The position numbers were made by a program, and so were the translations under genes. A DNA stretch of 36,740 bases from Macrostomum lignano (lineage: Eukaryota), in contig NIVC01003633.1 in assembly GCA_002269645.1 (NCBI GenBank), positions 1-36,740 of the forward strand. The letters are read 5' to 3'. A model generated the notes under the pieces. That model searched no databases. It had not been told where the DNA came from and saw only the letters and a list, made by a program, of their open reading frames with translations. Of the stretch, positions 6,001 to 28,073 are shown one piece after another (position 1 is the stretch's first letter; each line of letters opens with the position of its first letter).

Positions 6001-9000
6001 ATGAGTGCCTCCGACGCTAAAATGAGTGCCTCCGACGCTAAAATGAGTGCCTGCGGCGCTAAAATGAGTGCCTCCGCGCTAAAATGAGTGCCTGCGCGCT
6101 AAAATGAGTGCCTGTGGCGCTAAAATGAGTGCCTGCGGCGCTAAAATGAGTGCCTGACGCCAAAATGAGTGCCTGCGGCGCTAAAATGAGTGCCTGCGGC
6201 GCTAAAATGAGTGCCTCCGACGCTAAAATGAGTGCCTGCGGCGCTAAAATGAGTGCCTGCGGCGCTAAAATGAGTGCCTCCGACGCTAAAATGAGTGCCT
6301 TTGGCGCTAAAATGAGTGCCTGCGGCGCTAAAATGAGTGCCTTTGGCGCTAAAATGAGTGCCTGCGGTGCTAAAATGAGTGCCTCCGACGCTAAAATGAG
6401 TGCCTTTGGCGCTAAAATGAGTGCCTGCGGCGCTAAAATGAGTGCCTGTGGCGCTAAAATGAGTGCCTCTGGCGCTAAAATAAGTGCCTGTGGCGCTAAA
6501 ATGAGTGCCTCTGGCGCTAAAATAAGTGCCTGCGATGCTCAAATGAGTGCCAGTGGCGCTAAAATGAGTGCCTGCGGTGCTAAAATGAGTGCCTGTGGCG
6601 CTAAAATTAGTTCCTGCTGCGCTAAAATGAGTGCCTGCGGCGCTAAAATGAGTGCCTGCGGCGCTAAAATGAGTGCCTCCGACGCTAAAATGAGTGCCTT
6701 TGGCGCTAAAATGAGTGCCTGCGGCGCTAAAATGAGTGCCTTTGGCGCTAAAATGAGTGCCTTTGGCGCTAAAATGAGTGCCTCCGACGCTAAAATGAGT
6801 GCCTGTGGCGCTAAAATGAGTGCCTGCGGCGCTAAAATGAGTGCCTGTGGCGCTAAAATGAGTGCCTGTGGCGCTAAAATAAGTGCCTGCGATGCTCAAA
6901 TGAGTGCCTGTGGCGCTGAAATGAGTGCCTGCGGTGCTAAAATGAGTGCCTGTGGCGCTAAAATGAGTTCCTGCGGCGCTAAAATGAGTGCCTGCGGCGC
7001 TAAAATGAGTGCCTGCGGTGCTAAAATGAGTGCTTGCGGTGCTAAAATGAGTGCCTGCGTCGCTAAAATGAGTGCCTGCGGTGCTAAAATGAGTGCCTAC
7101 GGCGCTAAAATGAGTGCCTGTGGCGCTAAAATGAGTGCCTCTGGCGCTAAAATGAGTGCCTGTGGCGCCAAAATGAGTGCCTGCGGCGCTAAAATGAGTG
7201 CCTCCGACGCTAAAATGAGTGCCTCGACGCTAAAATGAGTGCCTGCGGTGCTAAAATGAGTGCCTACGGCGCTAAAATGAGTGCCTGTGGCGCTAAAATG
7301 AGTGCCTGTGGTGCTAAAATGAGTGCCTGTGGCGCTAAAATGAGTGCCTGTGGCGCTAAAATGAGTGCCTCCGACGCTAAAATGAGTGCCCCCGACGCTA
7401 AAATGAGTGCCTCCGACGCTAAAATTAGTGCCTTTGGCGCTAAAATGAGTGCCTGCGGCGCTAAAATGAGTGCCTGTTGCGCTAAAATGAGTGTCTGCGT
7501 CGCTAAAATGAGTGCCTGTGGCGCTGAAATGAGTGCCTGCGGTGCTAAAATGAGTGCATGTGGCGCTAAAATGAGTTCCTGCGGCGCTAAAATGAGTGCC
7601 TCCGACGCTAAAATGAGTGCCTGCGGTGCTAAAATGAGTGCCTGCGGCGCTAAAATGAGTGCCTGCGATGCTCAAATGAGTGCCTGCGGCGCTAAAATGA
7701 GTGCTTGCGGCTTAAAAATGAGTGCCTGCGGCGCTAAAATGAGTTCCTGCGGCGCTAAAATGAGTGCCTGCGGCGCTAAAATGAGTGCCTGCGGCGCTAA
7801 AATGAGTGCCTCCGACGCTAAAATGAGTGCCTTTGGCGCTAAAATGAGTGCCTGCGGCGCTAAAATGAGTGCCTTTGGCGCTAAAATGAGTGCCTTTGGC
7901 GCTAAAATGAGTGCCTCCGACGCTAAAATGAGTGCCTGTGGCGCTAAAATGAGTGCCTGCGGCGCTAAAATGAGTGCCTGTGGCGCTAAAATGAGTGCCT
8001 CTGGCTCTAAAATAAGTGCCTGCGATGCTCAAATGAGTGCCTGTGGCGCTGAAATGAGTGCCTGCGGTGCTAAAATGAGTGCCTGTGGCGCTAAAATGAG
8101 TTCCTGCGGCGCTAAAATGAGTGCCTGCGGCGCTAAAATGAGTGCCTGCGGTGCTAAAATGAGTGCTTGCGGTGCTAAAATGAGTGCCTGCGTCGCTAAA
8201 ATGAGTGCCTGCGGTGCTAAAATGAGTGCCTACGGCGCTAAAATGAGTGCCTGTGGCGCTAAAATGAGTGCCTCTGGCGCTAAAATGAGTGCCTGTGGCG
8301 CCAAAATGAGTGCCTGCGGCGCTAAAATGAGTGCCTCCGACGCTAAAATGAGTGCCTCCGACGCTAAAATGAGTGCCTGCGGTGCTAAAATGAGTGCCTA
8401 CGGCGCTAAAATGAGTGCCTGTGGCGCTAAAATGAGTGCCTGTGGTGCTAAAATGAGTGCCTGTGGCGCTAAAATGAGTGCCTGCGGCGCTAAAATGAGT
8501 GCCTCCGACGCTAAAATGAGTGCCCCCGACGCTAAAATGAGTGCCTCCGACGCTAAAATTAGTGCCTTTGGCGCTAAAATGAGTGCCTGCGGCGCTAAAA
8601 TGAGTGCCTGTTGCGCTAAAATGAGTGTCTGCGTCGCTAAAATGAGTGCCTGTGGCGCTGAAATGAGTGCCTGCGGTGCTAAAATGAGTGCATGTGGCGC
8701 TAAAATGAGTTCCTGCGGCGCTAAAATGAGTGCCTCCGACGCTAAAATGAGTGCCTGCGGTGCTAAAATGAGTGCCTGCGGCGCTAAAATGAGTGCCTGC
8801 GATGCTCAAATGAGTGCCTGCGGCGCTAAAATGAGTGCTTGCGGCTTTAAAATGAGTGCCTGCGGCGCTAAAATGAGTGCCTGCGGCGCTAAAATGAGTG
8901 CCTGTGGCGCTAAAATGAGTGCCTGTGGCGCTGAAATGAGTGCCTGCGGCGCTAAAATGAGTGCATGTGGCGCTAAAATGAGTGCCTGTGGCGCTAAAAT

Positions 9001-9713
9001 GAGTGCCTGCGGTGCTAAAATGAGTGCCTGCGGTGCTAAAATGAGTGCCTGCGGTGCTAAAATGAGTGCCTGTGGCGCTAAAATGAGTGCCTGCGGCGCT
9101 AAAATGAGTGCCTCCGACGCTAAAATGAGTGCCTCCGACGCTAAAATGAGTGCCTGCGGCGCTAAAATGAGTGCCTCCGACGCTAAAATGAGTGCCTGCA
9201 GCGCTAAAATGAGTGCCTGTGGCGCTAAAATGAGTGCCTGCGGCGCTAAAATGAGTGCCTCCGACGCCAAAATGAGTGCCTGCGGCGCTAAAATGAGTGC
9301 CTGCGGCGCTAAAATGAGTGCCTCCGACGCTAAAATGAGTGCCTGCGGCGCTAAAATGAGTGCCTGCGGCGCTAAAATGAGTGCCTCCGACGCTAAAATG
9401 AGTGCCTTTGGCGCTAAAATGAGTGCCTGCGGCGCTAAAATGAGTGCCTTTGGCGCTAAAATGAGTGCCTGCGGTGCTAAAATGAGTGCATGTGGCGCTA
9501 AAATGAGTGCCTTTGGCGCTAAAATGAGTGCCTGCGGCGCTAAAATGAGTGCCTGTGGCGCTAAAATGAGTGCCTGCGGCGCTAAAATAAGTGCCTGCGA
9601 TGCTCAAATGAGTGCCAGTGGCGCTAAAATGAGTGCCTGCGGCGCCAAAATGAGTGCCTGCGGTGCCAAAATGAGTGCCTGCGGAGCTAAAATGAGTGCC
9701 TGCAGCGCTAAAA
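1..9713. repeat. 21-bp satellite array, consensus GCCTGCGGCGCTAAAATGAGT, about 460 units, running off the left edge
   Basis: Unit read directly throughout. Variation is concentrated in the central 6 nt (tgcggc/tgtggc/tgcggt/tccgac/tttggc). The MSACGAK, GTHFSAA and ALILAPQ ORFs are translations of this 7-codon unit. Confidence 0.99.
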
Positions 9714-9807
9714 GTAAGCGCTGACAACACCGATCTCAAAATAATGTACCTGCCACCAAATCCATGGCGAGCTGTGTAAATAGCATACAACGTATACATG
9801 CCGAACT

Positions 9808-9904
9808 GCAGCGCTAAAAGTAAGCGCTGACAACACCGATTCTCAAAATAATGTACACGTAGAATTATATTGGCCCCACCATTCAATCCATGGCGACGCC
9901 CCTG
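9808..9904 (-). mobile_element. Putative terminus of a non-autonomous DNA transposon (hAT-like) bounding the 21-bp satellite
   Basis: Minus strand from 9904 reads CAGGGGCGTCGCCATGGATTGAATGGTGGGGCCA, a CAGGGG-type TIR-like start. Inward sequence CTGCAGCGCTAAAA matches the satellite unit. The partner TIR is not in the window. Confidence 0.4.
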
Positions 9905-11296
9905 TGTAAATAGCATACATGTACGTATACATGGTAACTTGAATTTTAGACGAACACATGCAGAAATGTTCATACGTGGGTATACTGCGCAGTATAATCC
10001 TCGAGTTTAGTTTGTACCTAACATGTAGTTTCGGTTTTTTGTTAGCTAGTAGGTACTAAAACAAGGATGTACGAAGGACGACTCAGGGGTACTTGGTAGT
10101 CGTTGTGTGAAGTATTGGGAATAATTGAACCGTTCGAAATTATACGACTAGCGCAATAAATAAATCATTTGTAATCAACATCGTGTAACTTAACTTATAA
10201 CTACCACTTTTGGGTGCTTAATTTTTAATGAAGTTCCACGAAATATCCGGTTCCAAATCCACTAAATAAAACATAGGATTGCTATAAAGCAGGAACTTAA
10301 ATATTACCTGATAAAAATGCTTTTGAAAAGTTTAACTTTAAAGAAATATAACTTTTTTATAAATATTTTTTGTAAGATAATGTTATAACGTGTTGATGAG
10401 TCGGGCTAATTATTTAAAATAGCATTCTCATGCATTTTTTATTTTTTGTTTCACACGAAAACTATAAAAATTTAAATGGTATCGTATAATTGATGAATAG
10501 GCTACGCTTTCCTTTTCTTAACTTTTATGAATTTGCAACTAACGTGACGTAAAAGTCAGGTATAATTCTGTGATCATTGTTCGAAGCTTTGATATATTAT
10601 ATAGTTTAACAGAATCGACTATTTGTTGAGATCGTCATTCAGAACTATTTTTTAAATTTTTGTCGTGTATAGACAAGAGGCCATTATCCGAATGATAATG
10701 CTTCCTCGGCCAAAACGTTCATTATAGAATGCTGACAGCGCTCGTAGTTTTTGACTTGTTTGCCCAGTCACTGTCACTGTGTCAGTGCTGTAGAATATTG
10801 ATAATTAGCATTTCTAGTCTAGCTGCATCCCTGCATTGGGTATAAAAAGTGTTGAATAGGCCCTTCAATATTTTAGGTAATTAAGCGACGTATAGAATAT
10901 AGATGGATGGGTAAATGAATGATTCACATAGCCCTACACTAACTAGCTAGGCCCTATACATGCATTGAGAGCAAAGTTTTGCAATTAGCATGGAACTAGG
11001 CCCTATTGACAACAGTTTTATTATTTCGACCCCCCACTGGAGCAGGTTTATCTGGCACTGACTCTACTCACACGAGAGTTGTGCTTTGGAAATTTTCTAT
11101 TTTGTTTGTAAATAGCCTAGACTAGCCCTATAGGTACGGTAGTCATATAGCTAAATAAGGTATGAAATAATTTCATATACTGCCTTTTTGTAAGTAAGCT
11201 TTTTTGTTTAAAATCAGATAGTGACAAACATAAAATTTGTAATTAGGAATAAATAATAAAAGATGTCTTCTTTGTGCAATTATATATTAATATATG

Positions 11297-11511
11297 TGTT
11301 ACAGGGGGTTTGCTTCCCTCTTTAGTTATCCCACTGCTGGTACCAAAGTTGTTACAGTGGTGATTCCTATACACTGAGAATCCCACCGCTGAGACACTAA
11401 GTTGTAACAGGCCTTTTGGCTCTAAGAATTTCACCGTTATGCCACCAAAGTTGTTACAGTGCTAATTTACTATTCTCTTAAGTGTTCTTCTTAGGTTGGT
11501 AGCTGCCACCA
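11297..11511 (-). repeat. Array of LTR-end/primer-binding-site-like units (TGTWACA + ACTT + tRNA-Leu-complementary PBS + variable spacer)
   Basis: TGTWACA at 11297, 11350, 11403 and 11452 (spacing 53/53/49). The last three are each preceded on + by AAGT and a tRNA-Leu-3'-end-like sequence: ATCCCACTGCTGGTACCA 11328-11345, GAATCCCACCGCTGAGACACT 11378-11398, GAATTTCACCGTTATGCCACCA 11426-11447. A further GCTGCCACCA lies at 11502-11511. Confidence 0.6.
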
Positions 11512-11580
11512 AGATTATCCTATTAATAAATTATGAGGTTATCAATCTTAGAATAATCCGAGAATGTTTCTTAGAATAGG

Positions 11581-11630
11581 TCTGAGTATTTAGTCTGAGT
11601 ATTTAGTCTGAGTATTTAGTCTGAGTATTA
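11581..11630. repeat. 13-bp tandem repeat TCTGAGTATTTAG x ~4
   Basis: Units start at 11581, 11594, 11607 and 11620. Confidence 0.9.
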
Positions 11631-13571
11631 TTCTTAGAAAAACTGTTAGCCCTGAAAGATTTTACTCTTCTGATTATTTTGGTAGCGTTCTATTATTCTG
11701 GTAGCGTTCTACTTATCTAATGGCCTGAGCGGTATTTTGGCTTACTGGTATATGTATTTCATGTACTTTGCAAGTCCTTGGGCATTACCGAGATCAGACG
11801 GTCACAGCCTCCATTATTCTTACACGTCTTACTTCAGATCTACTTCGCAACTTCTTACTACTCAACACTTTCCTTCTTAGTAGTAGGCCTATATACGGTA
11901 CACACCTTCGTCTACTTCAATCTTACTTCTTAAAGGAATGAATACAAAAAAACACTTCTTCAATTCTTATTTTCTCGGAACTCTTCTATTTGCTATCAAT
12001 TGCTTATTGCGAACCGCGATGCGCGAGGTTTGTTCTTCCTCTGCCAAATTTGCTTGTATTTATACTAATTTTACTTGTAGATTAAAACAAAAATTATATT
12101 TGTAAAATATTATGAGAAAATCATACAGTATAACAAACTATTTACTTAGCGTTTAGGCACGAATTTAAAAACATTATTACTTGTACAATTATAGATTGCC
12201 CTGCACATATGAAATTTCAAAAATGAGGGCAAAAGCCCTCATTTGCATATAATAAAAATATAAATATAAAAATATAAATAATGCATAATTCATAATATTT
12301 TAACAAAATATTATAAACTATTATATAATGATACTTTTTAATACCTGGCATGTTTTCTAATTTATTTAGCTCTTTTTTCATCATTTTTTGTATTTTCTCT
12401 ATTTAGTAGGCTATTTTTAGCTTATTTAGATTAGATAAAAGTTCCTTTTAATGACTATATAAGTATATAACACAATAATATATTGAGGTAGAGCCTAGGG
12501 GCAGTTTGCAAAGTTAAAATTTGAGGCAGTTTAGAAAACTTTGAATTGCCATTGGTATTTATGTTGGAGTTTGCATTTTGCATATTTAAAGCCAAAAAAT
12601 TGTGTAGTCAAATCTTATGAATTTGTTTGCTGGGTTACTATCTACTAGGGTCCTCAATTCCAAAGGGATGGTAATTAAAGTTGTAGTCAAGCAGTCTTAA
12701 TTAGGCACAAACATTTAGGTCCTATATGCTAAATCTTAATGTATGTTAGTTTGCAAAAAAGCTTAGGCCCTACTAATAGTAGCATTGTGCTAATACTACC
12801 TAGTTGATATAATAGACCATTAAGTTCTCAAAGCTTGCTTGGAGTTGATAATAAGTTATTTTATGTCCCATGAGCAAAGCTAGGTTTTTTGTGTCATAGG
12901 CATGCTATTGCTATGACATGTTGAAATTAAAAATGGTATAATGATTTTGATACTGTTATGACAAAATGACAACATTTTTTGCCATTATGCTATTGCCAAA
13001 TTGTCAATGCTGAATCCCCAATTCCAAATTTCAGTTTTGCTTTTAAATTTGTTCAAATATTTGCTAAATCCTTGTCATGTTGTATATTATATATACTTGC
13101 TAGTTTTCAAACTGGAAAGCTATTATCACTCCCATCTGAATCTGTAAGGAAACAGTAATATGGGCTCACAAAGTGCTATTTTACATTTTATGCCAATGGC
13201 ATGTTGAAATTGAAAAAAAACCCAAGGGCAAAATATTTAATAAAAATAATACTGTATAGCTTATTGATCAAAGAAAAAAAGGTTTACATTTATTGATATT
13301 AGGTTTAGGCAAGTTCAGCAAATTGTGGTTAACAATCTAGTTTAGTAGCATCATGGTGCACAAGGCTTACTATAAGTAGCTAGTTATTAGCACTATGTTT
13401 GTCAAGATAAATATTAGTGGTAGTTGCAATAAGAGTGCAATAAAATAGTTAGAGTAGGAGTTTAAAGCAAGCAAGAGAATGGGATTTTCAATGCTATGTC
13501 CATATTATGTGGTTGGGATGATAGAGGCTGTAAAGTTGAGATAAATGCAGTTGGCTCTTTACTTCTTCAAT

Positions 13572-13866
13572 ATAATAATAATTAATTACACTATTCATTG
13601 ATTACACCTGCCCTAATGGGCACATGTGCAACTGACAGCTCAGCCATAGCAATTGTGTGGCGCATCTGAAGGCTGCATATGGCTGTTCAGTCCAAGGACT
13701 GGGGGGTCGCCACACAGCCTCAATTACCCCAGCCCATGCTGGCACCCATCTTACAGCTGGGTGAACTGAAACAATGCAGAGTTAAGAGTCTTGCTCAAGG
13801 AGACAGATTGTTCCAATGGGATCAGGAATCAAAGTCATGAGTTCGACCCTCTATCCACTTGGCTAC
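13572..13866 (-). mobile_element. tRNA-derived CORE-like SINE, copy 1 (degenerate, B box deleted)
   Basis: Clearly homologous to 29085-29350 (shared GGCGCATCTGAAGGCTG, CAGTCCAAGGACTGGGGG, TTACAGCTGGGTGAACTGAA, GTCTTGCTCAAGGA). Minus-strand A-box GTAGCCAAGTGG and (ATT)n tail present. The segment holding the B box is missing. Confidence 0.8.
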
Positions 13867-14132
13867 AACTCTATCCTTAATATATTCCCCAATATGTTAT
13901 AATGAATCATGGAGGGACTGCTTGTCATTGGATTTAACATCATTTAAATTTATAGGAAATGAATTAGCTATAGATATGGATATTGGATATGGAAATGCTA
14001 TGGGAAAAATTAGGTACAACTACTACATATATAAATATAGTAAAAATTATTTTATGGTGTAAACTCTACCAATGATTATGAAATCGCTATAATAATTGCC
14101 CTTGCTTTATGCTGCAATCTTAAAAAGAAACA

Positions 14133-15185
14133 ATGAGCGATCTGAAGCAGCTCAATAGCTTAGTTAGCAATCTTGAATCGGCTCTGGGTGTCTCCGGAGG
14201 CAGCGGAGGTGGCGGTGGCGCCTCCGTAGCAGCCTTCGATTCGAGTGTTGGCGCTCGCCTTACCGAGTTCGACAATGCGTCTCGTCAAGTCGGCGGCGAC
14301 GTTGCCGAACTCTCGCCAATCGTACTCGACGCCTTTGCCGCCCTCCGATCTGTTCTGGTCGAAGCCTCCAACCGGCCGTCGCGTCCGAACGACGCAGAAC
14401 TGCAGCGCCTGCTCGAGCCGTTGAGCAGACGCTTGCAAAAAGTTGACGAATTTCGCAATTCGAAACGAGCCAGCGCTCAATTCAATCACCTGAGCGCCGT
14501 GGCGGAATCCATTGGCGCCCTTGGCTGGGTGGCGCAGCCGGAGAAACCGGCGCCGTTTGTTGAGAGCCTACGGGACGCCGGCGTGTTCTATTCGAATCGC
14601 GTGCTTAAAGAGGCTAAAGATGGCAAAGCTGGTGGCGAGGCTGGTGCCGCCTGGGCGAAGGCTTGGACAGCCGTCATCAACTCGATGATTGCCTATGTGA
14701 AGGAGAATCACCTCACTGGCCTGGTCTGGGGCGGCTCCGGCGGCTCCTCCGGCGGTACAGCGGCCGCCAGCGCCGAGGCCACTATGGAAAGCGTTCTGCA
14801 CCGTCTGGAATCTCTGACGGCCAAGGTGAAATCTGGCGGCGCCGGTGTCAAAGCTGGCTCGGGCGATGACGCTTCTAGCAACGGTTTTGGCTCCGTTGTC
14901 GACCGGATGTCGGCTTTCACGGCCGCCACGGTGGCTCTTGACTCCGCCGATACCGCGGATGTTCGTAAAATCGTTGATATGGCCAATATGGCTTTCCAGC
15001 TGTTGCGCAATCTGCTGGGCCAGCCCAGACCCGCTAGCGGCGGCGTTCAAAGCCTGCCAACTTTTCAACAGCTGAGCCAGAGTATCAATCAGGCTGTTGA
15101 GTTTCGCGAGGCTAACAGGACTAGCCGGTATTTTAATCACCTGTCCGCTGTCAGCGCCTCGCTGCCCGCCTTCGGCTGGGTTCAG
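14133..15185 (+). CDS. CAP: Adenylyl cyclase-associated protein (CAP/Srv2), exon 1 of 4 (351 codons): module 1 OD-HFD plus start of a second OD-HFD
   Basis: CAP HFD signature FNHLSAVAESIGALGWV...FY.NRVLKE, then a second FNHLSAVSASLPAFGWVQ. Donor CAG|GTTTGA at 15185/15186, phase 0. Confidence 0.95.
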
Positions 15186-15236
15186 GTTTGAGCTGTTTGG
15201 CTTAGTTAGTGGCTTCTGTTCTTTATTGATAATTGA

Positions 15237-15450
15237 TGTCTGTCTGTCCGTCTGTCTGTGTCTATCTGTCTGTACGTGTCTGTCTGTCTGTGTCTGTCTG
15301 TCTGTCTGTACGTGTCTGTCTGTCTATCTGTCTGTCTGTCTGTACGTGTCTATCCGTCTGTCTGTCTGTGTCTGTCTGTCTGTGTCTGTCTGTCTGTCTG
15401 TACGTGTCTGTCCGTCTGTCTGTCTGTACGTCTGTCTGTACGTGTCTGCC

Positions 15451-15489
<39 letters not shown>

Positions 15490-15496
15490 GTGTCCG

Positions 15497-15535
<39 letters not shown>
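15237..15535. repeat. (TGTC)n microsatellite with TGTACG interruptions, CAP intron 1
   Basis: Read directly. Source of the VCLS-repeat ORFs. Confidence 0.97.
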
Positions 15536-15663
15536 GTGTTTTTCTATCTAACTAACTTTTCTATTCTATCTACCTCTGTCAGTAAAAACTGAATATATCA
15601 TATTTTTCCTATCGAGAATGAGTATTCTTGTCTAGCTCTCCCCTTTCCATAACCTGTCCCCAG

Positions 15664-16014
15664 ATGTCGCCAGCCCCGGCCAAGTTCGTGCAGGACATGC
15701 GAGAGTCGGGCCAGTTCTACACGGATAAAATTCTCACCGAGTACAAGCGCTCAGACACTCGTCACGTGACCTGGGCCGCCGCCTGGATTGACCTGTTGAA
15801 GGAGATGCAGGCCTACGTCAAGGCTAAGCACACCACCGGATTCGTGTTTGCTGCCGGTGGCGCCGCCGCTGCGCTCGCTGCTGCTCCCCCGGCGCCGAGG
15901 GCTGGCGGACCCCCTCCGCCCCCGCCGCCGCCCCCGCCGCCCCCGCCTCCGCCAGCTGGTGGCGCCGACGATGGAGCCGCCAAAGCGGCCGCCCTGTTTG
16001 CGGAGATTAACCAG
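15664..16014 (+). CDS. CAP: CAP exon 2 (117 codons): end of HFD2, 15-proline P1 tract, start of WH2
   Basis: Acceptor CCTGTCCCCAG|ATG. MSPAPAKFVQDMRESGQFY continues the HFD motif; P15; ALFAEINQ. Donor CAG|GTAAGT, phase 0. Confidence 0.95.
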
Positions 16015-16085
16015 GTAAGTCTCCGTCTCTATTTGCGCTGCTGAGCTGGTGTTGTAAATCCCCTCTGATCCCATTAAGTGTCTAA

Positions 16086-17110
16086 ATATCCCATCTGATC
16101 CTATTTGGGTCTAAAAATCTGATGTAATCCCATATAGTGTCTGAAAATCCCATCTGATCCCATAGTGTCTGAAAATCCCATATAGTGTCTGAAAATCCCA
16201 TATAGTGTCTGAAAATCCCATCTGATCCCATATAGTGTCTGAAAATCCCATCTGATCCCATAGTGTCTGAAAATCCCATCTGATCCCATATAGTCCCTGA
16301 AAATCCTCTGATGATCCCATATAGTGCATGAAAATCCCATCTGATCCCATATAGTGTCTGAAAATCCCATCTGATCTCATATAGTGTCTGAAAATCCCAT
16401 CTGATCCCATATACTCGTAGTGCATGAAAATTCCATCTGATCCAATATAGGATCCGAAATTCCCATCTTATCCTATATACTACCTGAAAGTCCCATCTGA
16501 TCCCAAATAGTGCATGAAAATCCCATCTGATCCCATATAGTGCATGAAAATCCCATCTGATCCCATATAGTGCATGAAAGTCCCATCTGATCCCATATAG
16601 TGCATGAAAATCCCATCTGATCCCATATAGTGCATGAAAATCCCATCTGATCCCATATAGTGTCTGAAAATCCCATCTGATCTCATATAGTGTCTGAAAA
16701 TCCCATCTGATCCCATATAGTGTCTGAAAATCCCATCTGATTCCATATAGTGTCTGAAAATCCCATCTGATCCCATATAGGATCTGAAAATCCCATCTGA
16801 TCCCATATAGTGTCTGAAAATCCCATCTGATCCCATATAGGATCTGAAAATCCCATCTGATCCCATATAGGATCTGAAAGTCCCATCTGATCCCATATAG
16901 TGCATGAAAATCCCATCTGATCCCATATAGTGCATGAAAATCCCATCTGATCCCATATAGTCCCTGAAAATCCTCTGATGATCCCATATAGTGTCTAGAA
17001 ATCCCATCTGATCCAATATAGGATCCGAAAATCCCATCTAATCCCATATAGGATCCGAAAATCCCATCTAATCCCAATTAGGATCCGAAAATCCCACCTG
17101 ATTCCATTTA
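16086..17110. repeat. 30-bp minisatellite AAAATCCCATCTGATCCCATATAGTG(C/T)(A/C)TG, CAP intron 2
   Basis: 30-bp periodicity is obvious at 16500-16980, with a 10-bp internal sub-period. Explains the YGIRWDF and MGSDGIF ORFs. Confidence 0.95.
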
Positions 17111-17162
17111 GGAATAAGCGATCCAAAAAATCAATTAATCTTTAACTTTTCCCCGTTTCCAG

Positions 17163-17456
17163 GGCGAAGGCATCACCGGCCGACTCCGCAAGGTGCCCGA
17201 TTCGGCTAAGACGCATAAAAATCCCGAACTGCGCTCCGCTAAAAAGGCGCCGCCACCTGTGGCGCCAAAACCTGGTGCCGCGAATTCGTCCGCCTCGGTT
17301 AAGAAGCCGGCCGCGCCGGCCAAGCAGCCCGTGACGGAGCTGACGGGCCAGAAGTGGACTGTCGAATACCATAAGAACAATAGGAGTATTGTGCTGGATA
17401 ATACCAGTATTAAGCAGGCTGTGTACATCTTTAAATGCGAAGGTTGCACTATTCAG
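17163..17456 (+). CDS. CAP: CAP exon 3 (98 codons): WH2 end, P2 region, start of CARP beta-helix
   Basis: Acceptor TTTTCCCCGTTTCCAG|GGC. GEGITGRLRKV completes WH2; KW.VEY..N and VYIFKCEGCTIQ match the CARP domain. Donor CAG|GTGAGT. Confidence 0.95.
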
Positions 17457-17533
17457 GTGAGTTTACAAGAATCCGAAACCATATCGTGTACAAATATTTC
17501 TTGTTCAAACTGAGTAGTTAATATTGATGTAAT

Positions 17534-17945
17534 AAATCCCAAAATTCCCCAAAAAAGAGAATTCCCCATAGCAAAATAATCCCCAAAAATTCCCCATAGC
17601 CCAGAATCCCAAAATACCCCATAGCAAAGAATCCCCAAAAATCCCCTTTAGCAAAGAATCCCAAAATTATCCATAGCAAAGAACCCCGAAATCCCTCATC
17701 GCAAATAATCCCCAAATTACCCATAGCGAAAAATCCCCAAATCCCCCATAGCGAAAAATCCCCAAATTCTCCAAAATTCCCCATAGTGAAAAATCCCAAA
17801 ATTCCCCATAGCGAAAAATCCCAAAATTCCCCAAAATTCCCCATAGCGAAAAATCCCCAAATTCCCCATAGCGAAAAATCCCAAAAATTCCCCATAGCGA
17901 AAAATCCCCAAAAATTCCCCATAACAAAAAGCCAAAAACCCCCAC
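17534..17945. repeat. Irregular 25-35-bp A/C-rich minisatellite (AAAAATCCCCAAATTCCCCATAGCG), CAP intron 3
   Basis: Read directly. Built from 10-bp AAAATTCCCC sub-units and runs right up to the acceptor. Confidence 0.93.
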
Positions 17946-17947
17946 AG

Positions 17948-18289
17948 GTGAAAGGCAAGGTGAACGGCATCACCCTGGACAGCTGCCGCAAATGCGCTCT
18001 GGTATTCGACGATCTGATCAGCGCAGTGGACATTGTGAACTGTCAATCAGTCCAAACCCAATGCCTTGGCACAGTGCCAACTGTCAATATTGACAAAACT
18101 GACGGTGTGCAAGTCTATCTAACCGAAAATTGTCGATCAACTTGTTCGATTGTGGCCGCTAAATCTTCCGAGATGAACATCTGCATCGCTCTGGAGAATG
18201 GCGATGTCAAGGAGTACCCTCTGCCGGAGCAGTTCCGCAACGTATGGAATGGTAAAGGATTCACCACTGAGCCCACTGATCTGATTTGA
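17948..18289 (+). CDS. CAP: CAP exon 4 (113 codons + stop): CARP domain and C-terminal dimerisation motif
   Basis: Acceptor CCCCCACAG|GTG. VKGKVNGITLDSCRK, QCLGTVPTVNIDKTDGVQVYL, AKSSEMN and EYPLPEQF are typical CAP C-terminal motifs. TGA ends at 18289. Confidence 0.96.
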   Translation: MKGKVNGITLDSCRKCALVFDDLISAVDIVNCQSVQTQCLGTVPTVNIDKTDGVQVYLTENCRSTCSIVAAKSSEMNICIALENGDVKEYPLPEQFRNVWNGKGFTTEPTDLI

Positions 18290-18469
18290 CTTGATGAAGC
18301 ACTGCTGCCGAGTAACTAAGTTTTTATATTCAACTATAATATTTATTGCTCCGCGTATCAATATGAGTATTTATTTATTTTGATCAATTTAAATCAATCA
18401 TTCAATCATCTTTCATAGCAAGTTTTTTAAATGTATATTGTAGACTGTGTCAACATCGCTAAGTGGCTT

Positions 18470-18479
18470 AATAAATAAA
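18470..18479 (+). promoter_or_regulatory. Overlapping AATAAA polyadenylation signals, probably for CAP
   Basis: AATAAATAAA about 180 nt after the CAP stop. Confidence 0.5.
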
Positions 18480-18756
18480 AGTATAGGCTGTTCGATGTTT
18501 TAGAAGTACACACGGAACTTTCTGTGCTTGGTTTCTGATCGAATATTCGTATATCAAATCAATATTCCGTTTCTAATTCTTATTCAGAGGGCAACATGAA
18601 TTCTTTTATTTGATGCTTAGACAGGTTTGTTACTATTTATTTCAATTTTCTTTTTGTATTACCTTAGCTCGTATAACAATAAATCTGTTGCAATGCATGC
18701 CATTTATACAACACAATGACTATTGCTAGTTGGAAAAGTTACGGTTTTGTTAACAA

Positions 18757-19710
18757 CAGATCCTCAGTTGCTGGGCCAGCCTCTCAGATCCTCAGTTGCT
18801 GGGCCAGCCTCTCAGATCCTCAGTTGCTGGGCCAGCCTCTCAGATCCTCAGTTGCTGGGCCAGCCTACCAGATCCTCAGTTGCTGGGCCAGCCTCTCAGA
18901 TCCTCAGTTGCTGGGCCAGCCTCTCAGATCCTCAGTTGCTGGGCCAACCTCCCAGATCCTCAGTTGCTGGGCCAGCCTCTCAGATCCTCAGTTGCTGGGC
19001 CAACCTCCCAGATCCTCAGTTGCTGGGCCAGCCTCTCAGATCCTCAGTTGCTGGGCCAACCTCCCAGATCCTCAGTTGCTGGGCCAGCCTCTCAGATCCT
19101 CAGTTGCTGGGCCAACCTCCCAGATCCTCAGTTGCTGGGCCAGCCTCTCAGATCCTCAGTTGCTGGGCCAGCCTCCCAGATCATCAGTTGCTGGGCCAGC
19201 CTCTCAGAGTGTCAGTTGCTAGGCCAGCCTCTCAGATCCTCAGTTGCTGGGCCAGCCTCTCAGATCCTCAGTTGCTGGGCCAGCCTCTCAGATCCTCAGT
19301 TGCTGGGCCAGCCTTCCAGTGTCAGTTGCTGGGCCAGCCTCCCAGATCCTCAGTTGCTGGGCCAGCCTCCCAGATCCTCAGTTGCTAGGCCAGCCTCTCG
19401 GATCCTCAGTTGCTGGGCCAGCCTCCCAGATCCTCAGTTGCTGGGCCAGCCTCCCAGTGTCAGTTGCTGGGCCAGCCTCCCAGAATGTCAGTTGCTGGGC
19501 CAGCCTCCCAGAACGTCAGTTGCTGGGCCAGCCTCCCAGTGTCAGTTGCTGGGCCAGCCGCCCAGATCTTCAGTTGCTGGGCCAGCCTCCCAGAATGTCA
19601 GTTGCTGGGTCAGCCTCCCAGATCCTCAGTTGCTAGGCCAGCCTCCCAGATCCTCAGTTGCTGGGCCAGCCTCTCAGACTTTCAGTTGCTGGGCCAGCCT
19701 TCCAGATCCT
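18757..19710. repeat. 28-bp minisatellite GATCCTCAGTTGCTGGGCCAGCCTC(T/C)CA, array 1 (~34 units)
   Basis: Read directly. Same family as 30134-30567. Confidence 0.97.
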
Positions 19711-20250
19711 TCAAGTAAATTTTCTAGTTTAGTGCCGTGAGCTTTTCCAATTAATATTTATTATAAACCGGTTTTAACAAACTTTATGTTGCACTTTATA
19801 ATTTAATTTGTTAGCATTATATACATTCTTGATTATATTTATTCGTGAAATAAGTCTACAAAATCTTCCAAAATTACTTTTTCAACATCCGGTTTCGTCT
19901 ACCACAAATTTTGTGTATGTGAAAATATTAATGAATGCTTATAAAAGCATTGTTTATTTTACAACTAAACTGCTTGTGTTCAACCTGACCTTTTTTCAAA
20001 GTTTTTTAACTAGGCTTTTCATAATTGACTGTTTCAAATTTCAACACTACGCGATGTTAGTCAGGCGGTTTTTCCGACCGGAAACGAAATCCTTTCGCTG
20101 ATAATGGCCTAATTTTGCCCTTTATTGTAACACTGATTGACTCGCGTTCTTGCTAACGGAATCCACAATATTGCTTATTGATTATTAATTAAAATGGTAA
20201 ACAATAGTGGCATCACTTTCATTTTCAATCGGCTGTTTCTCGTGTTGTTT

Positions 20251-20896
20251 CTTTGGGATCACGGGTTCCTTTAGGATCACGGGTTCCTTTGGGATCACGG
20301 GTTCCTTTAGGATCACGGGTTCCTTTGGGATCACGGGTTCCTTTGGGATCACGGGTTCCTTTGGGATCACGGGTTCCTTTAGGATCACGGGTTCCTTTGG
20401 GATCACGGGTTCCTTTGGGATCACGGGTTCCTTTGGGATCACGGGTTCCTTTGGGATCACGGGTTCCTTTGGGATCACGGGTTCCTTTGGGATCACGGGT
20501 TCCTTTGGGATCACGGGTTCCTTTGGGATCACAGATTCCTTTGGGATCACAGATTCCTTTGGGATCACAGATTCCTTTGGGATCACAGATTCCTTTGGGA
20601 TCACAGATTCCTTTGGGATCACAGATTCCTTTGGGATCACAGATTCCTTTGGGATCACAGATTCCTTTGGGATCACAGATTCCTTTGGGTTCACAGATTC
20701 CTTTGGGATCACTGATTCCTTTGGGATCGCAGATTCCTTTGGGATCACAGATTCCTTTGGGATCACAGATTCCTTTGGGATCACAGATTCCTTTGGGATC
20801 ACAGATTCCTTTGGGATCACAGATTCCTTTGGGATCACAGGTTCCTTTGGGATCACAGATTCCTTTGGGATCACAGATTCCTTTGGGATCACAGAT
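20251..20896. repeat. 18-bp minisatellite in two homogenised blocks: CTTTGGGATCACGGGTTC x15, then CTTTGGGATCACAGATTC x~21
   Basis: Block switch at 20521. Ends about 96 nt before the DGCR6 ATG. Confidence 0.97.
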
Positions 20897-20992
20897 CATA
20901 TTATATTGATTATGTCATTATGACTGTTGTCTTGCTAATATCAACCTTAATGAAATTGTAATGCATGCTAATTAATAAGCACTGGACGCGGT

Positions 20993-21106
20993 ATGACGCA
21001 ATACATACCAAATTTGGATCCGGAACTTCTGCAAACTGTTGCGGAAGAATTACAGTCTAAAGAGGCGCTGCAAAGAAAGCACTACTTTCTGTTGGAGCAG
21101 CTGCAG
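20993..21106 (+). CDS. DGCR6: DGCR6/gonadal family protein, exon 1 (38 codons)
   Basis: MTQYIPNLDPELLQTVAEELQSKEALQRKHYFLLEQLQ resembles the DGCR6 N-terminus (QERHYQLLSALQ type). Donor CAG|GTAAAA, phase 0. Not in the ORF track because it is under 60 aa. Confidence 0.85.
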
Positions 21107-21169
21107 GTAAAAATCCAAAAATTGATAGGGAAGAAAGAGATCAGTTAGAATTCGATGAGCAAGAGAGTG

Positions 21170-22800
21170 AGAGAATCGATGGGGAAGAGTGATTAATGGG
21201 AGAAATCAATGGGGAGGAGAGATTGATGGGAGAAATCGATGGGGAGGAAAGATTGATGGGAGAAATCGATGGGGAGGAAAGATTGATGGGAGAAATCGAT
21301 GGGGAGGAAAGATTGATGGGAGAAATCGATGGGGAAGAAAGATTGTTGGGAGAAATCGATGGTGAAGAGATTGGGGAGAAATCGATGGTGAAGAGATTGG
21401 GGAGAAATCGATGGTGAAGAGATTGGGGAGAAATCGATGGTGAAGAGATTGGGGAGAAATCGATGGGAAGAGATTGGGGAGAAATCGATGGGAAGAGATT
21501 GGGGGGAAATCGATGGGGAAGAGAGATTGATGGGAGAAATCGATGGTGAAGAGATTGGGGAGAAATCGATGGTGAAGAGATTGGGGAGAAATCGATGGTG
21601 AAGAGATTGGGGAGAAATCGATGGTGAAGAGATTGGGGAGAAATCGATGGTGAAGAGATTGGGGAGAAATCGATGGTGAAGAGATTGGGGAGAAATCGAT
21701 GGTGAAGAGATTGATGGGAGAAATCGATGGTGAAGAGATTGATGGGAGAAATCGATGGTGAAGAGAGTAGGGAGAAATCGATGGTGAAGAGATTGGGGAG
21801 AAATCGATGGGGAAGAGATTGGGGAGAAATCGATGGTGAAGAGATTGGGGGGAAATCGATGGTGAAGAGATTGGGGGGAAATCGATGGTGAAGAGAGTAG
21901 GGAGAAATCGATGATGAAGAGATTGGGGGGAAATCGATGGGAAGAGATTGGGGGGAAATCGATGGGGAAGAGAGATTGATGGGAGAAATCGATGGTGAAG
22001 AGATTGGGGAGAAATCGATGGTGAAGAGATTGGGGAGAAATCGATGGTGAAGAGATTGGGGAGAAATCGATGGTGAAGAGATTGGGGAGAAATCGATGGG
22101 AAGAGATTGGGGGGAAATCGATGGGGAAGAGAGATTGATGGGAGAAATCGATGGTGAAGAGATTGGGGAGAAATCGATGGTGAAGAGATTGGGGAGAAAT
22201 CGATGGTGAAGAGATTGGGGAGAAATCGATGGTGAAGAGATTGGGGGGAAATCGATGGTGAAGAGATTGGGGGGAAATTGATGGTGAAGAGATTGGGGGG
22301 AAATCGATGGTGAAGAGATTGGGGAGAAATCGATGGTGAAGAGATTGGGGAGAAATCGATGGTGAAGAGATTGATGGGAGAAATCGATGGTGAAGAGATT
22401 GGGGAGAAATCGATGGTGAAGAGATTGGGGAGAAATCGATGGGAAGAGATTGGGGAGAAATCGATGGGAAGAGATTGGGGAGAAATCGACGGGAAGTGAT
22501 TGGGGAGAAATCGATGGGGAAGAGATTGGGGAGAAATCGATGGGAAGAGATTGGGGAGAAATCGATGGTGAAGAGATTGGGGAGAAATCGATGGTGAAGA
22601 GATTGGGGAGAAATCGATGGTGAAGAGATTGATGGGAGAAATCGATGGGAAGAGATTGGGGAGAAATCGATGGGAAGAGATTGGGGAGAAATCGACGGGA
22701 AGTGATTGGGGAGAAATCGATGGGGAAGAGATTGGGGAGAAATCGATGGGAAGAGAGATTAGAGAGAAATCGATGGGGAAAAATTGGGGAGAAATCGATA
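21170..22800. repeat. 26-bp (with 25/30-bp variants) purine-rich minisatellite GGGAGAAATCGATGGTGAAGAGATTG filling the DGCR6 intron
   Basis: Read directly. An ATCGAT palindrome occurs in nearly every unit. Confidence 0.96.
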
Positions 22801-22870
22801 AAGAAGTTTAAAAAAATCGGTGCTAATTAGGAGTGCACAATACCCCCCCCCCCCCCCCCATCACCCCCAG

Positions 22871-23386: not shown

Positions 23387-23539
23387 CTAAGTTTGATCGC
23401 TGACTCAGCATTGCACTATTAGGGCCTTGGTGTGCAATATGATCTTTGTGTGTACTACCGAGTCTGAACTCATTTTTGAGTCATAGCTTCGGTTATAACA
23501 CGGATATAGCTTTCATTTTATGACCCTTTGACTTCACCT

Positions 23540-24561: not shown

Positions 24562-24804
24562 TTTTTGTTGTTCTTTTATTTTGTTGCTGATATGTAACAC
24601 TGCTTAATATTATTACTGCACCTACATGTACTCGGCTTGTACTTGACTAATGTACTATTGCTAAATTCTACTATGTTAGCACATTTAATTGCTTTAATAA
24701 ACTCGCATTTTAGATATGTTTCTAAGAAGTGTTTCTTTGCTTCATTTTTTTAATTTTCGTTATCTCTTTAACAAGTAACTTAGGACAAACTCCGGCCCGC
24801 TGTT

Positions 24805-27651: not shown

Positions 27652-27802
27652 GTGAGGTCGAAATATTGCATTGTCTTGCTAGTCTTTGTTGTTAAAACAA
27701 AGTGCCGTCGAAACCGGCCCGGATCAGTTCCGAAGAACTCTGCCGCAGTTATATTTTGTGTTTGATCGAAAGAATTTAAAATATTTACAGATTTCGATTT
27801 TA

Positions 27803-27981: not shown

Positions 27982-28073
27982 CGATTTTACTAGGCTAATT
28001 AGCTGGCGAGGTTATTCATTCGTATACTCCAGCCGTTTACCCGAAATTGTATCACCCTACTTCACTTTCACAG

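What the first reader, a model, noticed from the sequence alone, without database searches (positions are those of the whole stretch)
14133..15849. CAP/Srv2 with a tandem duplicated N-terminal oligomerisation + HFD module
Seen: the 679-aa product has two complete modules. Module 1 (aa 1-200) is MSDLKQLNSLVSNLES...FNHLSAVAESIGALGWV...FYSNRVLKE...YVKENHLTGLVW. Module 2 (from M218, nt 14784) is MESVLHRLESLTAKV...FNHLSAVSASLPAFGWV...FYTDKILTEY...YVKAKHTTGFVF. They are followed by a single P1-WH2-P2-CARP half. Starting at M218 gives 462 aa, close to canonical CAP length (~475 aa). Established: CAPs normally have one HFD, oligomerise via the N-terminal RLE-motif helix, and use paired HFDs on the terminal subunits to depolymerise cofilin-decorated actin pointed ends. 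Inference: a covalently linked, diverged HFD pair could change oligomer state or supply an asymmetric two-site pointed-end binder. I do not recall this architecture but cannot exclude that it is known.
Basis: partly seen in the sequence, partly recalled or inferred. Interest (0 to 1): 0.8.

Follow-up and report, generated by a model that had tools for sequence, protein, structure and literature searches.

The report
Flatworm CAP with two actin-binding heads
This is a real gene of the flatworm Macrostomum lignano for the actin-recycling protein CAP, in which the N-terminal helix plus actin/cofilin-binding domain has been duplicated in tandem; this is an undescribed but not unique variant, because similar multi-domain CAPs are present, unremarked, in many public protein sets.

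Summary
Four GT-AG exons (14133-15185, 15664-16014, 17163-17456, 17948-18289) give a 679-aa protein. It has two modules, each a short helix followed by an HFD. They are 37% identical (BLASTP E 2e-31), and both are full CAP_N hits (E 5e-44 and 3e-39). One polyPro-WH2-P2-CARP half follows.

The organism is Macrostomum lignano. A second, collinear genomic copy (exons 99% identical) has the same uninterrupted junction. So do an RNA-seq-guided gene model and two UniProt entries, so this is not a mis-join.

AlphaFold2 gives two confident six-helix bundles. One of them superposes on mouse and human CAP1 HFD (TM 0.91-0.94). The model does not fix how the two bundles sit relative to each other.

The upstream HFD is the more canonical one. 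The downstream HFD is more diverged but keeps an intron position shared, within one codon, with Opisthorchis. Both leading helices are weaker than the usual double-RLE motif.

The architecture is not unique. Of the 150 best representative hits, 35 have 2-5 HFDs and 8 of these also have CARP (Pygsuia, a diplonemid, Lithocolla, Caenorhabditis auriculariae). I found no paper describing it.

The most likely function is higher HFD valency at cofilin-decorated pointed ends. This is inferred, not shown.

Verdict: a new variant of a known kind, of moderate interest.

The parts
14133..18289 (+). Whole CAP gene, start codon to stop codon. Four exons: 14133-15185, 15664-16014, 17163-17456 and 17948-18289. 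Product 679 aa.
   Evidence: Exons joined by hand at GT-AG sites give one frame of 2040 nt. The same splice sites are present in the second genomic copy L001. Residues 323-677 align end to end with human CAP1, PDB 9q7o.
14136..14183 (+). Leading helix 1 (aa 2-17), in the position of the CAP oligomerisation helix, but with no [RK][LIVM]E motif.
   Evidence: AlphaFold2 helix 2-17, pLDDT about 60-68. Motif count 0, whereas 62 of 78 single-HFD CAPs have 2 or more.
14220..14732 (+). HFD1 (aa 30-200): a six-helix bundle, the more canonical copy, encoded without an intron.
   Evidence: Pfam CAP_N E 5.1e-44, full profile length. PDB 6rsq E 5e-35. AlphaFold2 helices 31-192, mostly pLDDT above 90. Keeps 15 of 15 columns that are at least 90% conserved.
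14733..14783 (+). Gly/Ser/Ala-rich linker (aa 201-217) between the modules. There is no stop codon and no intron.
   Evidence: Continuous ORF. pLDDT below 50 at residues 202-215.
14784..14834 (+). Leading helix 2 (aa 218-234, starting at M218), with a single RLE motif.
   Evidence: AlphaFold2 helix 218-234, pLDDT 52-72. One motif. It aligns with inter-HFD helices of other two-module proteins.
14871..15852 (+). HFD2 (aa 247-414), split by intron 1 (15186-15663). This is the more diverged copy.
   Evidence: Pfam CAP_N E 3e-39. AlphaFold2 helices 252-406. Keeps 12 of 15 columns that are at least 90% conserved and 24 of 34 that are at least 80% conserved. The intron is phase 0 and lies one codon from the Opisthorchis felineus CAP intron.
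15910..15954 (+). P1 polyproline tract (aa 434-448).
   Evidence: Read directly from the sequence. It aligns to the CAP1 proline-rich region.
15994..17195 (+). WH2 motif (aa 462-479), split by intron 2 (16015-17162).
   Evidence: Aligned to the WH2 region of human CAP1 in the PDB 9q7o alignment. Coordinates.
17241..17276 (+). P2 proline-rich stretch (aa 495-506).
   Evidence: Read directly from the sequence and from the alignment to CAP1.
17322..18280 (+). CARP / CAP_C domain (aa 522-677), split by intron 3 (17457-17947).
   Evidence: Pfam CAP_C E 8.3e-60, profile 1-156 of 157. PDB 6fm2 and 1k8f at E about 1e-49.

Best explanation
What is shown. This is a genuine, expressed cyclase-associated protein (CAP) gene of Macrostomum lignano. 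Its 5' coding region, which encodes the short N-terminal helix and the helical folded domain (HFD), was duplicated in tandem. One polypeptide therefore carries helix1-HFD1, a flexible linker, helix2-HFD2, and then the normal polyPro-WH2-polyPro-CARP half. Both HFDs are intact six-helix bundles. Both keep the Phe-Tyr pair and the Arg that contact actin in mouse CAP1.

What is inferred. In canonical CAP, two HFDs from one oligomer must sit on the two terminal subunits of a cofilin-decorated pointed end to displace the last subunit, and activity rises with the number of HFDs held together. Here each chain supplies two HFDs, joined by a tether of about 50 residues. That tether is long enough to span the roughly 5 nm between two bound HFDs. 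A CARP-mediated dimer would therefore already present four HFDs. This should raise avidity for pointed ends and make the protein less dependent on the N-terminal coiled coil. That fits both leading helices being shortened or degenerate. The two HFDs have diverged unequally, so some division of labour between them is possible.
For: Gene and architecture:
- One 679-aa frame runs across three GT-AG introns.
- CAP_N matches twice and CAP_C once.
- The protein matches human CAP1 (9q7o) at E 5.7e-137, with two matched stretches.
- AlphaFold2 on a 15-sequence two-module alignment gives mean pLDDT 84.9 and two six-helix bundles.
- Foldseek: the model's best matches are single CAP HFD chains, mouse CAP1 HFD 6rsq/6rsw at TM 0.91-0.94 and human CAP-1 on the pointed end (9q7o_W, 9y9j_W).

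Not an artefact:
- A collinear second genomic copy (NIVC01000119.1) has the same exons at 99% identity, against 88-96% for introns and the upstream flank, and the same splice sites.
- Module 1 differs from that copy by 4 synonymous and 0 non-synonymous changes.
- The gene model there (PAA90257.1) comes from an RNA-seq-guided assembly that cuts transcripts at trans-splice sites (PMC5730564). It still joins both modules.
- UniProt A0A1I8GT03 (660 aa) and A0A1I8F693 show the same junction.

Functional residues:
- F152/Y153 and F369/Y370 align to mouse F162/Y163. R108 and R325 align to mouse R118 (alignment; residues named in PMC6876575).
- M1 keeps 15 of 15 and M2 12 of 15 of the columns that are at least 90% conserved among 126 single-HFD sequences.

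Mechanistic background:
- GST-dimerised HFD regains activity, and two HFDs dock on the two terminal actins (PMC6876575).
- Only the second HFD displaces the first subunit, and activity rises from monomer to tetramer (PMC13048244; PMC6888645).

Degenerate leading helices: 0 and 1 RLE-type motifs, against 2 or more in 62 of 78 canonical CAPs.
Against: - I could inspect no transcript reads or peptides. The single-ORF product rests on public gene models and on sequence conservation.
- The synonymous/non-synonymous counts are tiny (4:0 in module 1, 2:3 in the exon-1 part of module 2).
- AlphaFold2 pTM is 0.49 and the linkers are below pLDDT 50, so nothing is known about how the two HFDs are arranged.
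- Each HFD departs from the family at some interface positions. M1 has Asn where mouse CAP1 has E119. M2 has A342, D372 and F413 at columns that are 94-97% conserved. Equal actin binding by both is therefore not assured.
- The oligomeric state is unknown, so the idea that covalent tandem HFDs replace the coiled coil is pure inference.
- Whether M. lignano also has a canonical single-HFD CAP could not be determined.
Confidence: 0.7

Rival explanations
1. There are two products from one locus. An internal transcript start or spliced-leader trans-splice site just upstream of M218, or internal initiation, yields a canonical-length 462-aa CAP as the main working protein. The 679-aa form is then a minor or tissue-specific isoform.
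For: M218 sits in a strong start context, A at -3 and G at +4. Residues 218-679 match normal CAP length. Trans-splicing is very common in M. lignano (38.8% of genes; PMC5730564). Toxoplasma CAP has two isoforms from alternative start sites (abstract of PMC6785269).
Against: The first ATG also has A at -3, and four further ATGs (three of them out of frame) lie before M218, so leaky scanning is unlikely. The AG dinucleotides upstream of M218 have no pyrimidine tract, with 40-55% pyrimidines. The boundary-cutting annotation pipeline left both modules in one gene. Module 1 is conserved as coding sequence between the two genomic copies, 4 synonymous to 0 non-synonymous changes. It also keeps every highly conserved HFD column, which would not be expected of a 5' leader.
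Confidence: 0.15
2. The protein is a single polypeptide, but only one HFD still works on actin. The other, most likely the more diverged HFD2, has been re-used as a spacer or as a platform for another partner. The protein would then behave as an ordinary one-headed CAP with an extension.
For: Divergence is unequal. M2 keeps 24 of 34 columns that are at least 80% conserved, against 30 of 34 for M1. M2's changes include A342, D372 and F413 at columns that are 94-97% conserved. M2 is 40-42% identical to the best single-HFD CAPs, against 44-47% for M1.
Against: M2 still scores E 3e-39 on CAP_N. It keeps the Phe-Tyr pair and the Arg-Glu pair that contact actin. It folds confidently. Multi-HFD arrays recur in many lineages and keep HFD motifs in every copy, which suggests that copy number itself is useful.
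Confidence: 0.12
3. The architecture is an assembly or gene-model artefact: two adjacent CAP genes, or a collapsed duplication, wrongly fused into one ORF.
For: The M. lignano genome is repeat-rich and partly duplicated (PMC5730564). This window is full of minisatellites. Public models of the other copy are disturbed after the polyproline tract.
Against: The junction lies inside a single exon with no repeat, stop or intron. The modules are only 37% identical in protein, so they cannot have been collapsed by an assembler. The same junction occurs in this window, in NIVC01000119.1 and in two UniProt entries.
Confidence: 0.03

Closest known systems
Canonical metazoan CAP1/CAP2 (mouse and human CAP1; PDB 6rsq, 6rsw, 6fm2, 9q7o, 9xye, 9y9j)
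   Same: The domain order from HFD onward is the same: HFD, polyPro, WH2, P2, CARP. Residues 323-677 align to human CAP1 117-472. The predicted HFD fold superposes on solved HFDs at TM 0.91-0.94. The actin-contact residues Phe-Tyr and Arg are kept in both HFDs.
   Different: There are two helix+HFD modules instead of one, adding 217 residues. Both leading helices lack the usual double RLE motif. The gene has only three introns.
Other flatworm CAPs, e.g. Opisthorchis felineus CRM22_004937 (P0010, 465 aa)
   Same: Same family. The HFD is 38% identical to module 1. An intron lies in the GWV..PAP loop of the HFD, one codon from intron 1 of this gene and in the same phase.
   Different: It has a single HFD. 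The Opisthorchis locus carries exons of a second CAP paralogue rather than an internal duplication. Neither paralogue pairs specifically with M1 or M2.
Unnamed multi-HFD CAP-family proteins in public sets: Pygsuia biforma EP00033_P000629 (two helix+HFD modules), Namystynia karyoxenos (4 HFD + CARP), Lithocolla globosa (3 HFD), Apiculatamorpha spiralis (2 HFD + CARP), Caenorhabditis auriculariae CAD6197962.1 (2 HFD + CARP), and many metagenomic or transcriptomic proteins with 2-5 HFDs
   Same: They have tandem CAP_N domains in one chain. Several of them, like this one, repeat the short RLE-type helix in front of each HFD.
   Different: They are not orthologous. The best outside matches of M1 and M2 are single-HFD CAPs. 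Within-protein HFD identity in the others ranges from 34% to 97%, which points to separate duplications of different ages. Many lack the CARP half. None appears to have been studied, and the C. auriculariae model is an unverified automatic prediction.
Engineered HFD oligomers (GST-dimerised HFD; dimer, trimer and tetramer replacements of the coiled coil)
   Same: Several HFDs are held together by something other than the native coiled coil. In the experiments, this restores or scales pointed-end depolymerisation (PMC6876575; PMC6888645; PMC13048244).
   Different: Those are artificial constructs with identical HFDs. Here the link is a natural peptide tether between two diverged HFDs, and its effect has not been measured.

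Membership tests
Cyclase-associated protein (CAP/Srv2) | N-terminal helical folded domain (Pfam CAP_N, six-helix bundle) | tested here: met
   There are two copies, at E 5.1e-44 and 3e-39. AlphaFold2 gives two six-helix bundles. The model's best Foldseek matches are solved CAP HFD chains, TM 0.91-0.94.
Cyclase-associated protein (CAP/Srv2) | C-terminal CARP / CAP_C beta-helix domain, including the C-terminal dimerisation strand | tested here: met
   Pfam CAP_C E 8.3e-60, profile 1-156 of 157, aa 522-677. PDB 6fm2 and 1k8f at E about 1e-49. Dimerisation itself was not tested.
Cyclase-associated protein (CAP/Srv2) | Central polyproline (P1), WH2 and P2 segment | tested here: met
   A run of 15 prolines (aa 434-448), WH2 at aa 462-479 and P2 at aa 495-506, all aligned to human CAP1.
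Cyclase-associated protein (CAP/Srv2) | N-terminal coiled-coil oligomerisation helix with repeated RLE motifs | tested here: inconclusive
   Short helices are predicted at aa 2-17 and 218-234. They carry 0 and 1 [RK][LIVM]E motifs, against 2 or more in 62 of 78 single-HFD CAPs. Oligomerisation cannot be tested with these tools.
Cyclase-associated protein (CAP/Srv2) | Actin-contact residues of the HFD (mouse F162/Y163, R118/E119) | tested here: met
   The Phe-Tyr pair and the Arg are kept in both HFDs. The Glu is kept in HFD2 and is Asn in HFD1 (alignment; residues named in PMC6876575).
Cyclase-associated protein (CAP/Srv2) | Acceleration of cofilin-dependent pointed-end depolymerisation and nucleotide exchange on actin | not testable with these tools
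   This is a biochemical property. Only sequence and predicted structure were available.
Tandem multi-HFD CAP-family proteins (no published name) | Two or more CAP_N domains in one polypeptide | tested here: met
   Two CAP_N stretches here. The same feature occurs in 35 of the 150 best representative hits, and 8 of these also have CARP.
Tandem multi-HFD CAP-family proteins (no published name) | Common descent with the other multi-HFD proteins | tested here: not met
   The nearest relatives of M1 and M2 are single-HFD CAPs. The neighbour-joining tree does not group them with any multi-HFD protein. This is a convergent architecture, not one clade.

The most novel reading that the evidence does not exclude
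In Macrostomum the covalent HFD pair has taken over the job of the N-terminal coiled coil. The protein would work as a CARP-mediated dimer presenting four HFDs, instead of as a tetramer or hexamer. The two HFDs would have specialised: the canonical HFD1 for the terminal actin subunit, and the diverged HFD2 for the penultimate subunit, where a second interface is used. This would be a natural one-chain asymmetric pointed-end clamp. The recurrent multi-HFD CAPs of protists would then be independent solutions to the same valency problem.
Probability: 0.2. Interest if true: 0.65.

Novelty: new variant of a known kind. Interest (0 to 1): 0.45.

Why it matters
CAP is a central, universally conserved recycler of actin. 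A current open question is how many HFDs must be held together, and how, for processive pointed-end depolymerisation. The tetramer versus hexamer debate is discussed in PMC13048244 and PMC6888645. A natural CAP that links two diverged HFDs in one chain and has weakened coiled-coil motifs bears directly on that question. So do the unnoticed proteins with 2-5 HFDs in other eukaryotes. Together they form a ready-made comparative series in which HFD valency varies. It also matters for annotation: standard alignments place all homologues on HFD1 and treat HFD2 as an insertion, so the duplication is easy to miss. The finding does not reveal a new fold, a new activity or a new pathway.

Tried and rejected
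1. Word-index protein searches with aa 1-296 and with the two-module alignment A1 returned almost only M. lignano entries. I could therefore not find orthologues in other Macrostomum species or date the duplication.
2. A neighbour-joining tree of 214 HFDs placed M1 next to choanoflagellate sequences and M2 next to unnamed transcriptome proteins. I treat this as long-branch noise, not as evidence on origin.
3. I tested the hypothesis that two old flatworm paralogues fused. The two Opisthorchis felineus CAP paralogues in L002 are both closer to M1 than to M2, and closest to each other, so there is no support.
4. Leaky scanning to M218 is unlikely, because four ATGs intervene.
6. The Lingula locus was listed, but its DNA was not delivered, so it could not serve as a second outgroup for intron positions.
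7. A MAFFT alignment of full-length homologues to the N-half misaligned their C-terminal halves onto HFD2. I rejected it as input for structure prediction and used the two-module alignment A1 instead.
8. Literature searches for tandem or duplicated HFDs, for CAP in Macrostomum and for the gene identifier found nothing relevant. Only open-access papers are covered.
Full report
OBSERVATION

The window holds an ORF at 14133-15191 on the + strand. It ends only because it runs into an intron. Reading the sequence and joining exons at GT-AG sites gives four exons: 14133-15185, 15664-16014, 17163-17456 and 17948-18289. Together they make 2040 nt, or 679 aa, ending in a TGA at 18287-18289.

Residues 1-217 and 218-434 align over 205 positions with 37% identity and BLASTP E 2e-31. 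Pfam finds CAP_N (PF21938) twice. Module 1 scores E 5.1e-44 and covers the whole profile. Module 2 scores E 3e-39 and covers profile positions 21-158. Pfam finds CAP_C once, at aa 522-677, with E 8e-60.

Against solved structures the best match is human CAP1 (9q7o, E 5.7e-137), with two matched stretches. HFD1 aligns to CAP1 residues 36-174. Residues 323-677 align to CAP1 117-472, through the polyproline, WH2, P2 and CARP segments.

The finding's interval covers only the duplicated part; the gene extends to 18289.

ORGANISM AND REALITY OF THE GENE

The closest database proteins are from the free-living flatworm Macrostomum lignano:
- PAA90257.1, BOX15_Mlig023315g1, partial, 470 aa, 95-99% identical.
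- UniProt A0A1I8F693, 460 aa.
- UniProt A0A1I8GT03, 660 aa, named 'Adenylyl cyclase-associated protein'.
All three contain both modules in one open frame.

The NCBI model lies on NIVC01000119.1 of assembly GCA_002269645.1, fetched as L001. That locus is collinear with the window, and a DGCR6 gene lies downstream in both. Exons 1, 3 and 4 are 99% identical and exon 2 is 96.6% identical. Introns are about 88% identical and the upstream flank is 96% identical. All splice sites are the same. The locus is therefore a second copy (a homeologue or divergent haplotype) in a genome known to be partly duplicated (PMC5730564).

In the ungapped exons the two copies differ by 11 synonymous and 4 non-synonymous changes. 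Module 1 has 4 synonymous and 0 non-synonymous changes. These numbers are small, but they go in the direction expected for a translated, constrained sequence.

The annotation of that assembly is RNA-seq-guided and cuts transcription units at mapped trans-splice and poly(A) sites (PMC5730564). It still keeps both modules in one gene.

The junction between the modules lies inside exon 1. It has no repeat, stop or intron. The modules are far too diverged to be an assembly collapse. I regard an artefact as very unlikely.

In the other copy, exon 2 differs from the window by six gapped alignment columns. The public models of that copy read out of frame in and just after the proline-rich tract. The window copy reads through cleanly.

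ANATOMY

AlphaFold2, run on an alignment of 15 two-module proteins (A1), gives mean pLDDT 84.9. The model contains:
- a short helix at aa 2-17;
- a six-helix bundle at aa 31-192;
- a disordered Gly/Ser/Ala linker, with pLDDT below 50 at aa 202-215;
- a second short helix at aa 218-234;
- another disordered stretch at aa 234-245;
- a second six-helix bundle at aa 252-406.
pTM is 0.49, so the relative position of the two bundles is not predicted.

Foldseek returns solved CAP HFD chains as the best matches of the two-bundle model. Mouse CAP1 HFD (6rsq, 6rsw) scores TM 0.91-0.94 with rmsd 1.1-1.3 A for the best chains. Human CAP-1 bound to filament pointed ends (9q7o_W, 9y9j_W) also matches. Each target aligns over about 170-180 columns, that is to one bundle; the search does not say which.

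The two HFDs are not equally conserved. I compared each against 126 single-HFD sequences:

| Columns | Number | HFD1 keeps | HFD2 keeps |
|---|---|---|---|
| at least 90% conserved | 15 | 15 | 12 |
| at least 80% conserved | 34 | 30 | 24 |

HFD2 departs at A342, D372 and F413.

HFD1 is 44-47% identical to the best single-HFD CAPs. HFD2 is 40-42% identical to them. The two are 38% identical to each other. MAFFT places every homologue's HFD on HFD1 and treats HFD2 as an insertion.

Both HFDs keep the Phe-Tyr pair (F152/Y153 and F369/Y370, aligned to mouse F162/Y163). Mutation of that pair abolishes actin binding. Both also keep the Arg equivalent to mouse R118. The neighbouring Glu (mouse E119) is kept in HFD2 and is Asn in HFD1 (alignment; PMC6876575).

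The leading helices are weaker than usual. Of 78 single-HFD CAPs with complete N-termini, 62 have two or more [RK][LIVM]E motifs before the HFD. Helix 1 has none and helix 2 has one.

ORIGIN

Intron 1 interrupts HFD2 in phase 0 after GWVQ. In the liver fluke Opisthorchis felineus the CAP gene has a phase-0 intron after GWVSV. That is one codon away in the alignment. The downstream module therefore carries what looks like an inherited intron position. The same loop of HFD1 is uninterrupted.

This fits two scenarios: a genomic tandem duplication followed by intron loss in the upstream copy, or insertion of an intron-less copy. I cannot tell which.

A neighbour-joining tree does not join M1 and M2 and places both on long branches. 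I do not draw conclusions from it. A fusion of two old flatworm paralogues is not supported, because both Opisthorchis paralogues resemble M1 more than M2 and resemble each other most. No orthologue from another Macrostomum species could be retrieved, so the age of the duplication is open. At 38% identity it is not recent.

IS THE ARCHITECTURE KNOWN?

An exhaustive HMMER search with aa 1-417 against 1.84 billion representative proteins gave 1144 hits at E of 0.001 or better. Among the 150 best, 35 have two to five HFDs, and eight of these also have a CARP domain. Pfam confirms 2, 4 and 5 CAP_N stretches in examples.

Named sources include:
- Pygsuia biforma, with two helix+HFD modules that are 63% identical to each other;
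- the diplonemid Namystynia karyoxenos, with four HFDs plus CARP;
- Lithocolla globosa, with three HFDs;
- Apiculatamorpha spiralis;
- one animal, Caenorhabditis auriculariae, with two HFDs plus CARP, from an automatic and unverified model.

Several of these repeat a short RLE-type helix before each HFD, as here. Within-protein HFD identity ranges from 34% to 97%. The closest outside relatives of M1 and M2 are single-HFD CAPs. These are therefore independent duplications, not one family.

The ranking favours multi-HFD proteins because the query has two HFDs. The fraction 35 of 150 is not a frequency in nature.

I found no paper that mentions tandem HFDs, CAP in Macrostomum, or this gene. A 2020 review describes invertebrate CAPs only in terms of gene number (PMC7543520). 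Subscription-only literature was not searchable.

HOW IT MOST LIKELY WORKS

What is established elsewhere:
- The HFD binds the pointed face of cofilin-bound ADP-actin.
- Two HFDs dock on the two terminal subunits of a cofilin-decorated filament, with their N-termini within 5 nm.
- An isolated HFD is weak, and dimerising it with GST restores activity (PMC6876575).
- In cryo-EM, one HFD does not move the end subunit, but the second HFD displaces it by up to 7.6 A.
- Activity rises from monomer to tetramer, and whether native CAP is a tetramer or a hexamer is unsettled (PMC13048244; PMC6888645).

What is inferred here:
- Each Macrostomum chain offers two HFDs on a tether of about 50 residues, which is ample to span about 5 nm.
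- With CARP dimerisation, one dimer would carry four HFDs, the same number as a canonical tetramer.
- This should raise avidity for pointed ends and may relax the need for a strong N-terminal coiled coil, in line with the degenerate helices.
- The unequal divergence allows, but does not show, division of labour between the heads.

None of this has been measured.

RIVALS

An internal start at M218 giving a normal-length CAP cannot be excluded without reads. The context of M218 is strong. However, the first ATG is also in good context, four other ATGs intervene, and no acceptor-like pyrimidine tract precedes M218. Module 1 also behaves as constrained coding sequence.

A one-working-head protein, with HFD2 re-used for another purpose, is possible given its substitutions. 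But HFD2 keeps the known contact residues.

An artefact is very unlikely, for the reasons given above.

VERDICT

The observation and the structural interpretation are correct. This is a real CAP with a tandem helix+HFD duplication. It is a new variant of a known kind. It is undescribed in the literature I could search. It is already present in public protein databases, and it is paralleled by many unstudied multi-HFD CAP-family proteins. Interest is moderate (0.45). There is no new fold or activity, but it is a natural experiment on HFD valency that bears on a live question in actin disassembly.

Noticed in passing
window 1-9713: A single 21-bp tandem repeat array of about 467 copies at 90% match fills the first 9.7 kb. 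It creates long spurious ORFs on both strands, for example 7235-9724 (829 aa) and 7712-9973 on the minus strand, which give only sub-threshold Pfam hits.
   Followed up: partly
window 15237-15535, 16049-17111, 17560-17944: All three introns of the CAP gene consist largely of micro- or minisatellites: (TGTC)n in intron 1, a 30-bp unit repeated 36 times in intron 2, and 60/85-bp units in intron 3. The arrays differ in length between the two genomic copies, while the exons stay 99% identical.
   Followed up: partly
window 18757-19710 and 30134-30567: The same 28-bp minisatellite unit occurs in two arrays 11 kb apart, the first directly downstream of the CAP 3' end.
   Followed up: no
window 31104-35042: A 19-bp satellite of about 207 copies at 96% match has no G on the + strand (GC skew -0.87 to -1.0). 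Further arrays lie at 20251-20896 (18 bp), 21198-22799 (26 bp, strongly G-skewed), 23531-24561 (40 bp) and 35859-36453 (20 bp).
   Followed up: no
window 22820-23386 (+): This ORF encodes a DGCR6-family protein (Pfam E 1.9e-40). The same neighbour lies downstream of CAP in the second genomic copy L001, confirming collinearity.
   Followed up: partly
window 25669-27765 and 28047-28850 (+): Two ORFs give weak WD40/beta-propeller matches and are probably exons of one gene. The first contains an in-frame 27/54/84-bp coding repeat at about 25911-26380.
   Followed up: no
L001 12037-12391 (second genomic copy, exon 2): Relative to the window, exon 2 of the other copy shows six gapped alignment columns. 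The public protein models of that copy (PAA90257.1, A0A1I8GT03) read out of frame in and just after the proline-rich tract. I did not determine whether this is a sequencing error or a real difference.
   Followed up: partly
L002 (Opisthorchis felineus SJOL01006425.1) about 7200-24600: The 24-kb CAP gene model is interleaved with exons of a second, diverged CAP paralogue. The paralogue's HFD exons appear twice, about 7.2 kb apart (for example 12857 and 20056, or 13323 and 20530). This could be a nested or tandem paralogue, or an assembly duplication.
   Followed up: partly
proteins P0039, P0043, P0047, P0048, P0051, P0037: These are proteins of 800-1100 aa made of three to five tandem HFDs, with no CARP half and often a degenerate extra N-terminal HFD-like region. 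They come from unnamed transcriptomes or metagenomes. They look like a distinct HFD-array family that seems never to have been described.
   Followed up: partly
proteins P0170, P0110 and cluster members: Some coral (Porites harrisoni) and snail (Bulinus truncatus) database entries that are CAP N-terminal-domain proteins are named 'F-actin-capping protein subunit alpha/beta'. This is probably confusion of the abbreviation CAP with capping protein.
   Followed up: no
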